A DNA stretch of 64,000 bases from Fimbriosthenelais zetlandica (taxonomy: Eukaryota), in assembly GCA_977030845.1 (NCBI GenBank), contig OZ365116.1, forward strand, positions 15,624,001 through 15,688,000. The letters are read 5' to 3'. Under the pieces are notes generated by a model. The model saw only the letters and a list, made by a program, of their open reading frames with translations, was not told the origin of the DNA and did not search any database. Of the stretch, positions 35,801 through 45,000 are shown in pieces. The position numbers and the translations under genes are program-made. Position 1 is the first letter of the stretch. Each line of letters opens with the position of its first letter.

Positions 35801-36005
35801 GATCTAAGTTCAGTTGGGGGCTTCAGCTCTCGGGTTCATCCCATGGCTTCCTCCCCGTCCGCCGGCCATTCAGCTAACCATAATGGTTCAGCGCAGACAG
35901 AAGGCGCCACCTGGGCGAGCCGCCGTGACAGTGCCTCCCCAGGACATGAGGGCAACAACCGCAGCAATCCTGAGATGCTCACCTTTGAAAGTATAGGTTC
36001 AGTGG
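35801..36005 (+). CDS. WS/DGAT-like first coding exon (ATG at 35843)
   Basis: tttttttcag| acceptor; cccATGG context; MASSPSAGHS...EMLTFESIGSV; donor G|gtcagt, phase 1. Confidence 0.7.
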
Positions 36006-39000
36006 GTCAGTATCTTACATTCATCCATCAGCCAACAATCTCATTTGTCTCACTTAACTAGAACAAACAGATCAAAAGTAAGGTCAGCTATAACACTGTA
36101 CTATATGCTTGGGAGATATTGTGATATTGCATATATTACTTCCCTTGATGAGATTGAATGTAAATATTAAATGTACTCGTTTCCCTTTTCATTAAGATTC
36201 TGACAAAGAGCCTGGCGGGGCAGTAATAATATCACCGACTAAACACCCACAGACCATGGAGAATGGACCAAGTGGTGGCACAGAACAACTGTCAAACAGT
36301 GACAGTAAGGATGTCAACATTGACTTCTCCCACATGCAAGATACATCATCAACAGGTTCCAAGGGCAAGTCAGACCCACTGTGCACCAACCCGAGCATGG
36401 GTTCTTCACCCTATGTACGGCTGGAGCACCCCGCGGACAAAAGTGCCATGCTTTCCTTTATAGGAAGCGTAACGTTGCTGATAATTGCCCTGATCGTCTT
36501 CTGCCCAGTGTTCACATTTGTCATAATTGGCCTGCCTATTGCTGTTCTTGTCAGACAGTGTATGTTATGCTGTTGTTGTGCCAAACCCCGGAGGACCTGT
36601 TTGTGCTGTTGCTCTCCTGTGGTCAGTCATTCAGATTCGGTCTGGCTGCATGACACCTGTTTTAACCGAACTATCCTCCAAGGTCTTGTGACAATGGAGA
36701 AGGGACTTGACCTGGAGCGGATCAAAAATCTCATACATGCAAAATTAGTGGGCGGAGAGGATGCAAGGGGGAGGCTACTGTATCCAAAATTAACTCAGAA
36801 AGTGGTGCCTCTCTCTTCAGGCTTCATGTGGGAGCAAGATGACAACTTCAACATGGATAAACACATATATAACCTTCCTGCAGATCTCAAAACTAAAGCT
36901 GATCTTCAGAAGTACATTGCTGATATGTCTAGTCAGGAACTACCATGGGAGAGACCGCTATGGTGTATACAAGTTCTAGAGTCGTTTGGTGACAAGAAAG
37001 ACACGGTAGTCATCATTCGGATACACCAATGTCTGTGTGATGGTATATCTCTGTTAAATGTATTCCTTAGTTCATTAGTGGAGGAATATTCACTATACAA
37101 CAACAAACCAAGATATGGTCGAGGGACTTTCTTACTTAATACATTCCGTGCTATCGCCATGGGACCCCTTGTGTTCCTGCAGAAGTGGCTTTTCACAAGG
37201 AAGGACTATAATTTAATACATGCATCACCTCGGACAGGGAAAAAGGTGGTGGCTTGGTCAGAACCCTTCAGCTATAGAAAGGCCTTAAGGATTAAACAAG
37301 TGACCAGGAGCACATTAAATGATGTATTATTATCAGCAGCGGCAGGGAGTATAAGGACTTATTTCCAGAGTAAAGGAGTGAATAATCCATACAATATTCA
37401 GGCCAGTATCCCGGTTGACTTACGCACCAGAAGCAATGACAGTGCCATGAAATCCCAAACCACCCTTGTAGGGATCAACCTACCCACCAACACAGAGGGA
37501 GCTATACCTAGGTTATGGCAGATCAAACAAAGCATGGACCATTTGAAGAAATCAGCCGATTCTTTAGTCCTCTATGGTGCGCAATGGTTATTGGTTCATA
37601 TTTTACCAGTGTGTCTATGGCAAAGGATCTTGTCAAGTATTAGAGGAAACAGTACATGTATCATTGCTAACTTGCCTGGTCCGGAGAGTAACATTGCCTT
37701 TGCTACACGTCAGGTGCGGACTATGTTATCACTGCTACCACCACCCGATGAGGCGGCATTGTGTATATCATTCCTTACCTATGGTGAACAACTGCGTATG
37801 TCTGTGATAGCTGATCAAGGCGCCATAACAGATCCTACCATTCTTGCCAAAGACTTCGTTGTACAGGTAAGTTCTCAAACGATTATTGTTATGACACAAT
37901 TCACTGCACGTACTCAAGTAACACTGAATCAGCAGTGTTTGTCTAAGATGCCACGCCCTTAACTGTCTATCCTTTGATGCTTTAGATGGATAATTTTTAA
38001 ATGCAAAATAAGCACGTTTCATTTCATCATGAATAACTATCAATGTGGAGGGGAATTTTCCAATTTTTCAGTCTTGAAAATACAGTGGAAGTGAGACCTG
38101 ATAACTTCAAGTTTTGATTTCACACACCAGTTGCCTACCTCTGGTTAACAATGTTTATAGGTGATAGCTGGGATGATTATATCTTTCAGATGGAGAAGCT
38201 TTCTCACCTGTTGGCCCACCGCAGGATTCCAGGTGAACATCCAGGGCGGCGCTTTGATCTACATGATGACGGTCTACAGAGGGAACCCACCGTGGAGGAG
38301 GTGAGTGAGCAGGGAGGCTGGGGTTTGGCCAATACAGAACTCGACAAATAAATCAAGAGTTCTGTTAATAAATAAGCTGTCTGGCCTTACAGTGACCCTG
38401 TGTACTGTAAACCATGACATATCTGCTGCTCGCGAGGCCTTATACATTTTTCACGTGACAAGAGTCAGTAGATCGTAAGGGCTATTACTATTACTGGTTC
38501 CATGAACAGACTGATCCCAGAAATACCAACACCACACACGAACACACTTTACTTAGTTGTACAACTACTCGTTTCCATTTGTGTAATTCATATATGAATT
38601 GATTCACTCTCATATTCTGCCACAAAGTGAAAGAGAGCAACAGAATTGATGTTTACAGTATCCCAATATCCCAATTCTTTGTATAAGGATGATTACAAAC
38701 TGGTAGATTTAGTATATTATTTTGTTTGAAGTTTCCCCCAATCTATGTTCTCAGATTCCTTTTGTTATAGATATAGAACAATACAATATATTGCAGCATT
38801 TAGTGCCGTCTCTAAACTATGACCCCATGCTTCCCCTTCCCCTAGTGCCTCAATATATTCTGTTTGACGTAATAAGTTGGATATCATCATGGTATTGATA
38901 TGGTATCATGGTATTGATATGGTATCATGGTATTGGTCACACTTCCATCTCTGATAATAACGCATCAAAACTGCTTTGGATTGATCAGAAAATGGTGGGT

Positions 39001-42000
39001 GACATCCAGCAAGAGTTATGGGACATCAAAGTGGCCACAATCCGCTATTTTCTTCAGGAAAAGGAGGAGACTAACAACGTTAATGACCTTCATATGGCAA
39101 GTAGCGCAGTAGTAGCTCCAGTAACGCAACCCTTGCTTTTAATTGGCTACTCATTCCGCAGTTGCTATGGCAACATAATTAGCATCACTTGAGTGATTAA
39201 GCACTTTGATCCTGCCTATATATGTATATGTATACCTTTAGGGCTATCATCCATTCCAGACCCCTTACATGTATTAGCATCTATTATATTGTGCCCTTAG
39301 GATATGTGATGTGTTAGGGTGAGGGCTTTACATTTTAAGCAATAACCTTAATTATATGGAATTTGTCCTGTCCTTAATGTGCTATTATTTACTCATATAT
39401 AGATTCCATTTTCAGCCACATATATCCCAGGAGACTGACACACAGTTTCTTTCCATGGGATATTGTGGATGGGAAGAGAGTATCCAAAATAGGTATTTGG
39501 ATCATATTAACTTAGGTAGTGGATCCACCATAAATGCAGGAAAACACTGTAGTTGTGCTCCGTATAAAGGTTTAGAACCAGGATGAAGAGTTGTATACAT
39601 CCATTAGTTGCTATCGTTGCTGGATCCACACCTTAAGGTATAAAATATGATTACTGGATGTACATAAAATGCACCGAAGTAATTCACTTCAGAATGAACC
39701 ATTTATATTGTTTTATCCCACGTGGATCACCGCACACCTTTCCTTGTGTTCACTGATTTAAAATATATCTTTTTACTATGTTTATTTTAAGTGAATATAA
39801 GGAATATAAGGAAATTAGAGAATGCCATAAGCGTATCTGATATCTGTATAATCGTCATTATCCCTAGGTAGATAACGAAGTTATGATATCATGATTTCAT
39901 TAGACAATCATGAAATAGGAGTGAATCTGTGTGGATGAGTTAGGTACAAGTGGGTCCAGGCAAGGTGGCATGCAGCAGGGAAGATTTTGAGGAGGGAGAG
40001 GTTGACCAAGTAGTGACCAGCTGTGGTGGTGGGTCATCAGCATCCTGTCAGTCTGGTGAGAGGTGTGTAACAGCTGCATTCAGCCATTAAGTCACTACAG
40101 CCACCTGTATATAGTACATATACATGGAGGGTCAGGGCAAGTACAGCTACACCAGGTGCTTGCTACATACCTCAAATATTATATTCTCATATCACCTCAA
40201 ACCTGGACCAGACAATCGAGGTCAAATTAAAAGGTCATTTTATTTTTTAAATTGTCTCATTAGGGAGAAAAGGTCATTTGAAATATAGATAACATGTCGT
40301 GTCAGACTATCAGACATGTATTCTTTCAGTTCATGTTATTGATTCTACAAAAATTAATTCCCTTTAAGAATATGCATGCCATAGCGTGCTGGTGATCTTA
40401 ATGGAGGCGATCTCCATGGCTACGGAACCATTTTAAGATATCAAAACAGTTCTCTTAATGGTCATCAAAGGGCACAGCATTCATCATGAAGTTCTATCAC
40501 TTGAGCCATCCCGAACAAAAAATCTGAGGCAGCATTTCAAGCACTTCACTGTAGAGAAGACTGATCGATAACTGTGACAGAGATAGAAAATCTTGTCAGT
40601 GTAACCATCAAAGGGAATTAAACATATTCTGGGTGTCGGGCTTCATGCAGGCCACTCTGTATTAAGACATACAAAATGACCTTCAGAGCAGTCTCTTATA
40701 AGAGATCACAAGTGGCACCAAACAAATCACAAAAGAACTTGCATGAGGACATTGCCATTGGCTGTGTGTTAACTTCTCATCATTGAGAGCTCATCTTTGG
40801 CTTTACTTTTGCAGCTTCAAGCCAAGATGGCTGCGGTCCAACAGCAACTACAGGCGCTAAAAGCCAGACTTGACACCGAGGAGACGGAACGCTTCTCAGA
40901 GGAGGAACGCGCGCTGGTGGACAGGGTGGAGCAATTAAAGGAGGAATTCAGGGAACTGCTGGCCGAACTGAGGCGGAGAAGGATAGCTCAAGGATCATCT
41001 GTCCTCTCTGATGATGTGAGTTATTAACTATCTCTTTTAAAAATTAAGAGATTTTGTCCAACTTTGTTACCCCCTTACTAGACATAATAGGGGGTAGAAC
41101 CTTGGATAGTTTTTCAGTCAAATATATAGGGGTCAGGGAGTCAAAGGTACCATCTTTGTGCATTCTTGTTTTTTCCTACAAGTGTTTATTTTAACATTTT
41201 GACGACTTTTTATGCCCTTTAACAGTCTGTTAGGTTTGATTCCTAATTCCTATACAATGTTTACTCTGCTCTTATCATAGATTTTAGAACAATCTTTTAG
41301 AGCAAAGCTTCAATTTTGTTTTATTCTCCATTGATGTAACTTTAGAGAATAGAATCTTTGGGACTTGTCATTTATATCGAAGCCACTTATTCCTCAAATG
41401 AAAGGTATTAAAACTTAGGAATATCTTCATAAAAAATACAAGGCCTCTTACATGTATAGAGTGGGATCAAGTTTCGACTGCTAATTTCTTTTAAATGAAC
41501 CACTTTTACAATGTTTGGTTTGGCACAAGACCTTTAAGATGGCCATGTATCAGGAAACATGTGAGGTCTCAGTCAAGCTTTTTTTTCTTCAAATCAAAAA
41601 TGGTTCCATGAATTAAAGATGAAGTACATGTCATCAATCATTCTTTGACCTTAAATGTATCCTCTACCAGGATTCCCTCATCAAATACAATAAAAAAAAA
41701 CAAAGTTGAGAATGATTGAAATGACATAATTCTTTGATAAATCTAATAAAAGATAATGATTTGTTGCTGACCATGCAGAGCCGACACGGTCCCGTTCGGT
41801 CTCTCTCTGTTTGAGGTAGGATCCTACTTCTAACATCCTACTTTCCACCAGCCATTAACAATAGCCGATCATCCCATTAGGTAATAATCAGCGTTTAATA
41901 CACCATGTTATATAGGACTAACCCCGTCACTGTTATTTGGATTAACCAGGGGTAATGGTTGCAATATGGACGGTACACATACAAGGAATACCATCATATA

Positions 42001-45000
42001 TATAGGCATTGCTAAGGGGAGGAAATCTCATTTGTCTGACTCTATTGCTCTGCAATACATTTTTGGGGATTCCAGCCATAAATAATAGCCTGGGATTTAA
42101 TGCAAGAAATGTGCTTTACACAATGGTAATTCTACTGCTCACATTTTCTCTGGAAACCAAGCTGATTCCCCGATCATAATGCTGGCATATATGATGGTGT
42201 GTATTATATTCCAAAATGGAAATTTTATCAAACGGCTTGTTCTGTCAAATTTCCCATATAGATGAAGAACTAAGTCACTTATCCAAGCCCATCAAGCCAA
42301 TAATACATGGCAGAAACTGTCCATATTGCATGGCCTTTCCTCCATTTAGACTCTCAATGGAATGGATAATTTATAGAGGAATGCCCTGTGTCATCACCAC
42401 TCTCATCTCTAACAAGACTGCATGTAGAGTGATGATTCTGAGTGTGTAGATTAGTTGCCTAGAATTAAGCACCTCTGCCATGGGAATGACTTACAGATAT
42501 ATAATACAAATATGTATATTCACGCCACAAATGAGTATTTACATTCAATAAGGTTGCTTCAGGCACATTTTTGTTAATTGCGAAATAAGATAACTGATAA
42601 CTGATTGCTAGATCAGACTATCAAGAAGTAATGCTGCACAAAATATAGTGTCCTATTTCTTAATGGTTATAGATGTAATGACTTATATGTCAATAACATC
42701 GTTAATACATGTATAATTAAGATGTATTGCATAGAAACTGATCAATTATATATCATTCATTAATTACTATTACTAGCAATCACAGGACTAGTTTTCATAG
42801 CTTCATTGATGACACATTTCTCTACCACGGATCACATTCAAACTTGTACCGAGTTGTTTTTCATCCTTTTTGGGTGCATATTCATTTTCTCATTTGGAAA
42901 TAAGCACATATAATCTTTCCTTGCACTTTCTATTCAGGTTTATCATTTACCTGGCATTCATGTTTTCATAAGGAAAAGAACCGTACTTTCTTATGTCATT
43001 CATTGACAATTATCTGCTTTATAAATCACGAGCAAATACAAGAAAATCAGTTTTATGCAATTTTAAATGTGGAAATATCCGTAAAACTGCATTCCAATTG
43101 ATAGAAGGAGCACTGAGTTATAATTTGAAGAATGACTGTATTGACAACCAGGGTACACTTGGACAGAGCGTTAAGTGCATTAGCTAGCATCCTTGATACT
43201 TTTGGCAGCTTTTAGTTATTAAGGGCAATGGGTGTAATCTGATAGGTAACTGGTCAAGAGCCTGACTTAGATGAGTTGGGGTAGACCTTGGAATGGTGCC
43301 GACTTCTCTGTCAGCGGCCTTTGGTCGGACTATTTTAATAACTCTGTCTAAAGGGTTGACACAAAGCTTTATTAACAATGTATGATGTGCACTGTGTAAC
43401 TTCCACCAAGTCTGGCCGCAGTACTAGCAAGTATATAATTATGTCATCTTATATGAGTAAAAGCTTCCATCTATGGAATTCAATGTGACATGATTAAATC
43501 ACATTAAAAGGAAGACTTATTGGAAAACCTCCAAATAAATGCATTTTCTCATTGAGGAGAGTATTAAATATTGAGGGATTGAAGACAACTTATTCAGATG
43601 TATAAATGACTGTGATTTTGCTCTCAGGAGAATGATGACGACGGTGAATTAAGACGTTCATCTTATCGTAAACGTACCGTGTCGGGTTCATCACGACGTT
43701 CATCCTCCATCTCTGCTAGTGCATCAACAAACAGGCCTCTCACCACCACCTCTCCCCCTCATTCTGCACACTCTTCTAGTCCCATCACTTCAAGGCCAAA
43801 CTCCCCCAGTGCAATGTCAGCACCGGTAAGTTTCCCTAGTTCAGGACCTCTCACCCAGAACCCCATCCTCTTCCCCAGCCGTCAACGTCATCCCTATCGC
43901 CGTTTCCACACTTTCCACTCTCCTCACTCTCCCACCTCCCGCATGCATGCAGACTCCCTGTTTATCATTGCACCCAAAGCATCTCCTTCAACAGCATCAG
44001 CCTCAATGGTTCCACTAACAACTGGCTTGAAAAACACTGGTTCAGTGCCTGATGGTCCAGGTGTTCATAGTCAGACTGGGTTCTCCACCAGTGTGACCAA
44101 GGAGGCCAAGGCAGCAGTACACTCAAATGCCTCAGCCATCAGTGGTGGTGTGCTCCAGGCACGGGACTTACTCTCTCAACAGGGCACTCACTCCCAGTCT
44201 TGGCCCTCTTTGGTAAGTTTGCCAATTACCTCACCACATTTCAACAATATTTAAAATAATCAATAAATTTATACAGACACACATTTCAACAATATTTAAA
44301 ATAATCAATAAATTTATACAGACAAGATTAATAACTTTGTTGACAGATAAGCTGCATTACTTTGTACTTATAAATATCTCTGACATAAATATCTTTCGAC
44401 AACAGAAAATAGATGGAAAAGATCACTTACTGGTTGTGTCCACTGTCAATGTCTTCCTCTGAATCCCTCTAGCGACGTCTTGTGTGACAAGTCGTTTGAG
44501 GTCATGCAAATTCGGACAAAGTTAAAAACATTGATTTTCATGCCACTTTCGTTTGTCCATCATCCACATGCCCTGTCAAGCGACGAAAAATTCGGTTCAG
44601 GTCGTTAATGATTCAGTTGGGAAAAAACGATAGTGGATACAGCTAGTCAAACATTTTAAAATGAAGAGCATTCTCTAAAAGTTTTTATGCAGCTGTATCA
44701 AGGATACTATATACAATACCGATACTCTACTATCTTTGGGTGAATGGCATATACATGACATTGATGACATTCCCTATCTTATTTCCCAGTGAACCTCTCC
44801 CAGACCTCATCTTGTGTGATGTATAGTTTCATGGAACTATTGCTATAGCTTCTATTACTTTAAGCCTATTCCTTTCACTTTATGTATAGATCTGCAGATC
44901 CTTAGCCTATATATCTGTTCCCTGCCCCTAGCTTTTATTATTATGCTGCCCGAAAAATTATTTCTACAACAAATCCTTTCTCCTGCATTCTATCATCTTC

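What the first reader, a model, noticed from the sequence alone, without database searches (positions are those of the whole stretch)
37024..37044. Catalytic motif is HQxxxDG: probable pseudo-enzyme or altered chemistry
Seen: CAC CAA TGT CTG TGT GAT GGT = H-Q-C-L-C-D-G. Known: WS/DGATs use HHxxxDG and the second His is the catalytic base (H133 in Acinetobacter AtfA). Here that position is Gln, while the ORF is intact and other fold motifs are retained. Inference: a catalytically dead lipid sensor or scaffold (consistent with the coiled coil and tail), or catalysis by the first His or the nearby Cys residues.
Basis: partly seen in the sequence, partly recalled or inferred. Interest (0 to 1): 0.7.

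Follow-up and report, generated by a model that had tools for sequence, protein, structure and literature searches.

The report
Animal WS/DGAT-like protein lacking catalytic histidine
This intact animal gene encodes a membrane-anchored relative of bacterial and plant wax-ester/triacylglycerol synthases, from an ancient cnidarian-plus-bilaterian branch that lost the family's catalytic histidine, so it cannot work by the textbook mechanism and its real function is unknown.

Summary
Window 37024-37044 reads H-Q-C-L-C-D-G, and the Gln aligns with the second (catalytic) His of HHxxxDG in the solved Acinetobacter and Marinobacter WS/DGATs.

It is not an error or a private allele. Two orthologues keep Gln (CAA, CAG), and pN/pS is 0.13-0.29.

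- In a well-supported clade of cnidarian and bilaterian homologues, this position is Pro (45), Gln (34), Ser, Ala, Leu, Met, Arg or Glu.
- It is His in only 3 of 94 bilaterian representatives, against 81 of 82 canonical representatives.
- The window's Gln arose secondarily from Pro.

The first His, the Asp, and the PLW, ND and PGP motifs are largely kept. Canonical K344 and G516 are also lost. A new invariant signature (TEGxxPRLW plus a basic patch) appears.

The clade also shares an N-terminal hydrophobic anchor, a Cys cluster, a coiled coil and a Ser/Arg-rich tail.

The canonical His-base mechanism is excluded. Sequence data cannot separate a ligand-binding pseudo-enzyme (my slight preference) from non-canonical catalysis. 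The neighbouring Cys residues are not conserved.

I found no paper on this animal clade.

The parts
37024..37044 (+). HQCLCDG, the counterpart of the HHxxxDG active-site motif (aa 257-263 of the exon ORF; aa 328-334 of the five-exon model)
37027..37029 (+). CAA = Gln at the position of the canonical catalytic (second) His, four residues before the motif Asp
   Evidence: Orthologues L001 (CAA) and L002 (CAG) also encode Gln.
35843..35996 (+). Putative upstream coding exon (Met plus about 51 aa, disordered, Ser/Gly-rich). Its GT donor joins in frame to the acceptor at 36196.
   Evidence: tblastn with P0003 N-terminus; frame and splice sites. No RNA support.
36197..37866 (+). Main exon: N-terminal region, membrane anchor, Cys cluster and almost the whole WS/DGAT-like domain. 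An internal ATG at 36256 was used as the ORF start in my searches.
36448..36552 (+). 35-residue hydrophobic segment (aa 65-99, two internal Pro): a transmembrane helix or a hairpin anchor
   Evidence: helix 64-109, pLDDT 85-93; Kyte-Doolittle 2.97; TM-like segment in 81/94 clade members
36559..36612 (+). Cys cluster (9 Cys in 18 residues, with Lys/Arg) directly after the anchor: a likely palmitoylation site (inferred)
   Evidence: (3 or more Cys in 54/94 clade members against 1/82 canonical)
36955..36963 (+). PLW motif, retained
37288..37308 (+). Clade-specific basic patch R345/K347/R351 on the helix before the ND motif. The canonical Lys at 344 is lost here.
37318..37323 (+). ND motif (N355 D356), retained
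37480..37518 (+). LPTNTEGAIPRLW, the clade-defining invariant signature, shared by cnidarian and bilaterian members and absent from canonical WS/DGATs
37669..37683 (+). NLPGP motif, retained
38190..38300 (+). Exon with the last helix of the WS_DGAT_C domain and the conserved NRRIPGEH linker
40815..41015 (+). Exon encoding a charged helical region with a 3-4 hydrophobic spacing (coiled-coil-like). It is conserved with annelid, nemertean, brachiopod and mollusc-like homologues.
   Evidence: (56% identity to Owenia, E 4.6e-10)
43628..44254 (+). Exon encoding the acidic then Arg/Ser-rich tail (RRSS, RKRTVS and SRRSS type sites). The 3' end is uncertain: the ORF runs to a stop at 44254, but a possible donor lies at 43826.

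Best explanation
The gene encodes a member of an ancient animal (cnidarian plus bilaterian) subfamily of the WS/DGAT acyltransferase fold. In this subfamily the general-base His, four residues before the motif Asp, was lost before bilaterians diversified. That position now varies freely; the window's Gln is a recent change from Pro. The textbook reaction cannot run here, because it needs that His to deprotonate an alcohol or diacylglycerol hydroxyl for attack on acyl-CoA. The fold, the two-lobe tunnel architecture and most pocket motifs are kept under strong purifying selection. My preferred reading is a cytosol-facing acyl-CoA- or lipid-binding pseudo-enzyme. It would be tethered to a membrane by the N-terminal hydrophobic anchor and a palmitoylatable Cys cluster, oligomerised through the C-terminal coiled coil, and regulated through the Arg/Ser-rich tail. 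In that role it would act as a lipid sensor or scaffold rather than a bulk wax or TAG synthase. Shown: the motif, its alignment, the clade-wide loss, the hypervariability of the site, purifying selection, the fold, and the shared architecture. Inferred: lack of catalysis, topology, palmitoylation, oligomerisation and regulation. The confidence given is for the pseudo-enzyme reading. The narrower claim, that the canonical second-His mechanism is excluded clade-wide, I hold at about 0.9.
For: Alignment to solved enzymes puts Gln on the second His. The AF2 model (pLDDT 85, about 95 around the motif) has 6chj and 7nxg as best Foldseek hits, E 2.8e-22 and target-normalised TM 0.71. At this column the bilaterian clade has P45, Q34, S5, H3, M3 and others among 94 representatives. 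Canonical representatives have H in 81/82. The cnidarian sister proteins have Arg and Glu there. The clade is supported at 100/96 and bilaterians at 100/99 in the careful tree. The window is nested inside Pro-bearing lineages at 100/99. Parsimony needs at least 16 changes at this one site. Other canonical invariants are also relaxed or lost: K344 kept in 2/94, G516 in 5/94, N400 in 39/94, N472 in 59/90, and the motif Gly replaced in 11/94. New invariants appear (R351, R367, E414, P418, W421). Overall divergence of the two groups is equal, with mean pairwise identity 0.36 against 0.34. pN/pS is 0.13-0.29 with saturated pS, and the Gln codon varies synonymously. Four clade members lack both His residues. 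The anchor, Cys cluster and long C-terminal extension are clade-wide and rare in canonical proteins. Literature: in active WS/DGATs the first His can be Ser or Asp but the second is strictly conserved (PMC5513132). The title of Stoveken et al. 2009 states that both His are essential in AtfA. In the same superfamily, C-like interface domains without the second His act as non-catalytic partners (PMC13638107).
Against: The most conserved blocks of the clade still lie at the canonical active-site elements (RxHxCxxDG(I/V)SL and STLNDVLLS). The window keeps 30 of 36 canonical near-invariant residues. That pattern suits a pocket still used for chemistry as well as for binding. An NRPS C domain with His-Pro in place of His-His is essential for its pathway. 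No activity, binding, localisation or expression data exist. I could not obtain model coordinates to test tunnel patency or the orientation of His257.
Confidence: 0.47

Rival explanations
1. The protein is still an acyltransferase but with non-canonical catalysis. Three routes are possible: the retained first His (H257) is reoriented by the following Pro or Gln; a clade-specific invariant residue such as E414 acts as the base; or the acceptor is an amine or thiol that needs no general base, so the product is an N-acyl or S-acyl lipid rather than a wax ester or TAG.
For: Active-site-proximal motifs remain the best conserved parts of the protein. H257 is kept in 90/94 and D262 in 91/94. New invariant residues exist. 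In the HP-type C domain of MxgE, the H138A, P139A and D143A mutants each abolish production, and the catalytic role of the second His in C domains is described as debated (PMC13638107). There has been more than 550 My of purifying selection on both lobes of the fold.
Against: H257 is no better conserved than the first His of canonical enzymes (90/94 against 77/82), where it is dispensable for activity. Two independent lineages have lost both His. For O-acyl transfer in this superfamily the second His was essential wherever tested. Several canonical invariants (K344, N400, N472, G516) are relaxed.
Confidence: 0.4
2. There is an alignment or register artefact: His257 is structurally the catalytic His, so the motif is functionally canonical.
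For: None directly. It cannot be excluded without coordinates, because a Pro or Gln after the His might shift the local register.
Against: The alignments are ungapped, with identical spacing from Arg255 to Asp262/Gly263 in all 203 sequences and in both PDB alignments. In the AF2 model the strand ends at residue 257 and the helix starts at 263, the same strand-loop-helix order that the ungapped alignment implies for the canonical motif.
Confidence: 0.05
3. The Gln is a sequencing error or private allele, or the gene is a decaying pseudogene or a bacterial contaminant.
For: None.
Against: Gln is encoded by CAA, CAA and CAG in the window and in two orthologues at 84% and 62% identity. pN/pS is 0.13. 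The gene has five exons with AG/GT boundaries and no internal stops, and its tail exons are conserved. Homologues occur across animal phyla.
Confidence: 0.01

Closest known systems
Bacterial WS/DGAT (Acinetobacter baylyi AtfA/WSD1, PDB 7nxg; Marinobacter WS/DGAT, PDB 6chj) and plant WSD1
   Same: Same two-lobe fold (Foldseek E 1e-20 to 1e-22). Both Pfam domains are present. PLW, first His, Asp-Gly, ND and NxPGP motifs are kept. 30 of 36 near-invariant residues are kept.
   Different: The second (catalytic) His is Gln here, and Pro or other residues across the clade. Canonical K344, G516 and often N400 are lost. The TIGR02946 score of 177.8 is far below its cut-off of 309.95. The protein adds an N-terminal anchor, a Cys cluster, a coiled coil and a Ser/Arg tail, and has a new TEGxxPRLW signature.
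Thraustochytrium TrWSD4/TrWSD5 (active eukaryotic WS/DGATs with a non-canonical motif; PMC5513132)
   Same: Eukaryotic WS/DGAT-fold proteins with a degenerate HHxxxDG motif and extra coiled-coil or TM segments.
   Different: The pattern is reversed. They replace the first His (Ser, Asp) and keep the second, and they are active. The window keeps the first and lacks the second.
Non-catalytic condensation-like domains of NRPS (interface/I domains lacking the second His, PMC13638107; X domains of glycopeptide NRPS, from my own knowledge)
   Same: Same acyltransferase superfamily fold, loss of the second His, and retention under selection for a partner- or ligand-binding role.
   Different: Those are modules of bacterial assembly lines that bind carrier proteins or oxygenases. 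This is a stand-alone animal membrane protein. The resemblance is one of principle, not of membership.
C domain of MxgE with His-Pro in place of His-His (PMC13638107)
   Same: The same HPxxxDG-type substitution that dominates the animal clade. The His, Pro and Asp are each required for pathway function.
   Different: It is a bacterial NRPS domain of the dual-C clade. Its catalytic role is unresolved and it has no close sequence relationship.

Membership tests
WS/DGAT superfamily (Pfam PF03007 + PF06974) | Both Pfam domains above their gathering scores | tested here: met
   PF06974 scores 86.8 bits (cut-off 20.7) and PF03007 scores 41.2 bits (cut-off 23.6).
WS/DGAT superfamily (Pfam PF03007 + PF06974) | Two-lobe CAT/condensation-like fold closest to solved WS/DGATs | tested here: met
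   AF2 pLDDT 85.3. Top Foldseek hits are 6chj and 7nxg, E 2.8e-22 and 2.9e-20.
Canonical wax ester/triacylglycerol synthase (NCBIfam TIGR02946) | Score above the curated subfamily cut-off | tested here: not met
   177.8 bits against a cut-off of 309.95.
Canonical wax ester/triacylglycerol synthase (NCBIfam TIGR02946) | HHxxxDG with the second His as catalytic base | tested here: not met
   Gln at that position. Canonical representatives have His in 81/82 and the animal clade in 3/94.
Canonical wax ester/triacylglycerol synthase (NCBIfam TIGR02946) | Acyl-CoA:alcohol/DAG O-acyltransferase activity | not testable with these tools
   Needs an enzyme assay or yeast H1246 complementation.
Animal WS/DGAT-like clade (defined here) | TEGxxPRLW signature plus basic residues R351 and R367 | tested here: met
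   The window has LPTNTEGAIPRLW, R345, K347, R351 and R367. These are shared with cnidarian and bilaterian members and absent in canonical proteins.
Animal WS/DGAT-like clade (defined here) | Phylogenetic placement inside the clade | tested here: met
   Careful IQ-TREE: clade 100/96, bilaterians 100/99, window subclade 100/100.
Animal WS/DGAT-like clade (defined here) | N-terminal hydrophobic anchor plus Cys cluster, and a long C-terminal extension | tested here: met
   (TM-like segment in 81/94, Cys cluster in 54/94, C-terminal extension of 100 aa or more in 48/94 despite truncated gene calls).
Pseudo-enzyme | Loss of an essential catalytic residue with retention of the fold under purifying selection | tested here: met
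Pseudo-enzyme | Demonstrated absence of catalytic turnover | not testable with these tools
   No biochemical data. No coordinates were available to inspect the active site.

The most novel reading that the evidence does not exclude
Animals carry an ancient, uncharacterised family with the WS/DGAT acyltransferase fold that has switched chemistry. It would be a membrane-anchored enzyme using a new catalytic arrangement, or a base-independent amine or thiol acceptor, to make a class of N-acyl or S-acyl or otherwise unusual lipids in cnidarians and in the protostome and ambulacrarian phyla sampled here. No vertebrate or insect member appeared among the named hits; absence was not tested.
Probability: 0.3. 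Interest if true: 0.8.

Novelty: new variant of a known kind. Interest (0 to 1): 0.55.

Why it matters
Databases label these animal proteins 'putative diacylglycerol O-acyltransferase', which implies a bacterial-type route to wax esters or TAG in invertebrates. The comparative data show that this label is probably wrong for the whole clade. The catalytic His has been missing since before bilaterians diversified, yet the protein has been kept under strong constraint with a distinctive membrane-anchor, coiled-coil and phospho-tail architecture. That defines a deeply conserved animal lipid-related protein family of unknown function. It also gives a natural experiment on what the WS/DGAT fold does without its base. 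Clear tests are available: activity against binding, and variants restoring the second His or changing the first. The family should not be used uncritically in metabolic reconstructions of invertebrate wax or TAG synthesis.

Tried and rejected
The gene model rests on homology and splice consensus only.
2. Active-site geometry: structure prediction gives no coordinates and none are in /data. I therefore could not test the orientation of His257 or Glu414, or tunnel patency.
3. dN/dS: synonymous sites are saturated in both orthologue pairs. I report raw pN and pS instead.
4. The Marinobacter structure paper (PMC6761989) is not held, and the Villa et al. mutagenesis paper was not found. Residue-level roles of the ND, PGP and K344 positions therefore remain unassigned.
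5. Literature searches for any description of animal WS/DGAT-like proteins found nothing relevant.
6. Cys-based catalysis is rejected as a conserved mechanism.
7. A conserved replacement His at the N-terminal WLHD segment is rejected, because His132 is present in only 41/85.
8. Sequencing error, private allele, pseudogene and contaminant are rejected.
9. A search seeded with a collembolan member returned only 12 hits, and none of the named ones was an insect. Absence from insects and vertebrates is not proven.
10. The weak alphavirus E2 hits (E about 0.7) to aa 83-117 are compositional matches of a TM segment plus Cys stretch, not homology.

Full report
**1. Observation**

Window 37024-37044 on the + strand reads CAC CAA TGT CTG TGT GAT GGT, which is H-Q-C-L-C-D-G. 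It lies in a 537-codon exon ORF (36256-37866) that ends at a GT donor.

- The ORF matches Pfam WS_DGAT_C (E 1.8e-24) and WS_DGAT_cat (E 2.1e-10), both above their gathering scores.
- It matches NCBIfam TIGR02946 at E 3.4e-52, but at 177.8 bits it is well below the curated cut-off of 309.95.
- phmmer against PDB sequences finds only the two solved WS/DGATs. It aligns the window's I-H-Q-C-L-C-D-G, without gaps, to I-H-H-A-M-V-D-G of 7nxg (A. baylyi AtfA/WSD1) and V-H-H-S-L-V-D-G of 6chj.

**2. Gene and fold**

The gene is a genuine spliced animal gene.

- tblastn with long homologues identifies an upstream coding exon (35843-35996), the main exon (36197-37866), and three downstream exons: 38190-38300, 40815-41015, and 43628 onward.
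- Joined, they give an open frame with AG/GT at every junction.
- The 3' end is uncertain. There is a stop at 44254 if the last exon is not spliced again at 43826.

An AF2 model built on 57 homologues has mean pLDDT 85 and about 95 around the motif. It places the motif between a strand ending at residue 257 and a helix starting at 263. Foldseek ranks 6chj and 7nxg first (E 2.8e-22 and 2.9e-20, target-normalised TM 0.71), followed by NRPS condensation-type domains.

**3. Not an error, not a private allele, not decay**

Two orthologous loci, at 84% and 62% protein identity, also encode Gln. The codons are CAA, CAA and CAG, so the Gln codon itself varies synonymously. Synonymous sites are saturated (pS 0.76-0.85) while pN is 0.10-0.24, giving pN/pS of 0.13-0.30.

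**4. How wide is the loss?**

A word-indexed search and an exhaustive HMMER search gave 203 related proteins.

Named animal members include:
- annelid, nemertean, brachiopod and molluscs;
- hemichordates and an echinoderm;
- a priapulid, tardigrade and rotifer;
- chelicerates, myriapods, crustaceans and collembolans;
- two cnidarians.

A quick tree of 178 sequences and a careful IQ-TREE of 65 were built with the two motif columns removed. Both recover a clade of cnidarian plus bilaterian proteins (100/96) and, within it, the bilaterians (100/99).

At the catalytic column:
- The 94 bilaterian-clade representatives have Pro 45, Gln 34, Ser 5, His 3, Met 3, and a few Ala and Leu.
- The two cnidarian sisters have Arg and Glu.
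- The 82 canonical representatives have His in 81.
- His occurs only in two myriapods and a barnacle. These carry the clade's own signature residues and do not regain canonical K344.

Nematostella also has a separate, fully canonical His-His paralogue outside the clade.

Parsimony needs at least 16 changes at this single column. It reconstructs Pro at the base of the subclade that holds the window, so the window's Gln arose from Pro at the base of the window/P0001/P0002 lineage. That lineage is nested at 100/99 support.

**5. What else changed**

The two groups are equally diverged: mean pairwise identity 0.36 against 0.34, and mean column entropy 2.17 against 2.28.

Of the 36 columns that are nearly invariant in canonical enzymes:
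- The clade keeps the fold core and much of the catalytic loop: W192, F198, H203, W236, R255, first His 90/94 and Asp 91/94.
- It has lost K344 (kept in 2/94) and G516 (5/94).
- It has relaxed N400 (39/94), N472 (59/90), D127 (D/E split) and the motif Gly (83/94).
- The window itself keeps 30 of the 36.

In the other direction, the clade has its own invariants that are variable in canonical proteins: R351, R367, K347, E414, G415, P418 and W421. These form a basic patch before the ND motif and the signature LPTNTEGAIPRLW, and the cnidarian members share them.

The architecture is also clade-wide:
- A TM-like N-terminal segment occurs in 81/94.
- A Cys cluster after it occurs in 54/94, against 1/82 canonical.
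- Long C-terminal extensions are common. They include a conserved charged helix with 3-4 hydrophobic spacing and an Arg/Ser-rich tail.

The positive charges and Cys cluster on the C-terminal side of the anchor, together with the kinase-type sites in the tail, suggest that the domain faces the cytosol. This is inference.

**6. Mechanistic reading**

What is established:
- In characterised WS/DGATs the second His is treated as essential. The title of Stoveken et al. 2009 says both His are essential in AtfA (seen).
- Active Thraustochytrium enzymes replace the first His but strictly keep the second (PMC5513132).
- A C-domain-like O-acyltransferase, MxgH, needs the second His (PMC13638107).

With Pro, Gln, Ser, Ala, Leu, Met, Arg or Glu at that site, the clade cannot use the canonical base. 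The chemical diversity of the replacements shows that no particular side chain is required there.

Two readings remain.

(a) A ligand-binding pseudo-enzyme.
- For it: several other canonical invariants are relaxed, and two lineages have lost both His.
- For it: the scaffold-like additions (anchor, coiled coil, phospho-tail).
- For it: non-catalytic C-like interface domains that lack the second His are a precedent.

(b) Non-canonical catalysis.
- For it: the best conserved blocks still surround the old active site, and new invariant residues have appeared.
- For it: an HP-type C domain has been shown to be essential for its pathway.

I put (a) at about 0.45-0.5 and (b) at about 0.4. The data do not separate them.

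Cys at D-3 is about equally frequent in canonical enzymes, and Cys at D-1 is confined to a few lineages. First-His catalysis is neither supported nor excluded, because H257 is conserved to the same degree as the dispensable first His of canonical enzymes.

**7. Comparison with what is known, and novelty**

The protein belongs to the WS/DGAT superfamily by domain and fold. It fails two defining tests of the canonical enzyme family: the TIGR02946 cut-off and the second His.

The nearest analogies are to catalytically altered members of the wider condensation/acyltransferase superfamily, namely interface and X domains and the HP-type C domain. These are analogies of principle only.

Five literature searches and several full-text look-ups found no description of the animal clade or of its motif. 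Databases name the members 'putative diacylglycerol O-acyltransferase'. I class it as a new variant of a known kind.

**8. Limits**

- No coordinates were available, so no active-site geometry could be measured.
- Taxon names are known for only part of the homologues.
- Absence from insects, nematodes and vertebrates is suggested by the named hits but not proven.

Noticed in passing
window 35843-35996: A probable upstream coding exon (Met plus about 51 residues) splices in frame into the acceptor at 36196. The true start is then probably upstream of the ATG at 36256 that a plain ORF scan gives.
   Followed up: partly
P0100 versus P0120 (Nematostella vectensis proteins): Nematostella has two WS/DGAT-fold genes. 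One is a fully canonical His-His type outside the animal clade. The other is a non-canonical His-Arg..Asp-Val type that is sister to the bilaterian clade. This makes Nematostella a convenient species in which to compare the two.
   Followed up: partly
P0038, P0081, P0158 (Strigamia, Chamberlinius, Pollicipes): These three clade members have His-His again, yet carry the clade signature and lack canonical K344. They are either reversions from Gln (one third-position change) or relics. Either way they are natural controls for activity tests.
   Followed up: partly
P0054, P0055 (dust and storage mites); P0026, P0027, P0031, P0012: The motif has decayed further in some lineages. The mites lack the Asp-Gly (Ser-Gln-Ser instead), and four proteins have lost the first His as well (Ser-Ser or Ser-Pro).
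   Followed up: no
P0188 (canonical group): One representative in the otherwise His-His canonical group has His-Gln. It is a possible independent loss outside animals.
   Followed up: no
window 36502-36606 (aa 83-117): Weak PDB hits (E about 0.7) to the C-terminal TM and palmitoylated Cys region of alphavirus E2 glycoproteins. I read this as compositional resemblance of a TM helix followed by Cys residues, not homology.
   Followed up: no
window 43628-44254: The last exon's frame stays open for about 200 codons of low-complexity Ser/Pro/Thr-rich sequence beyond a possible GT donor at 43826. The true C-terminus is unresolved.
   Followed up: no
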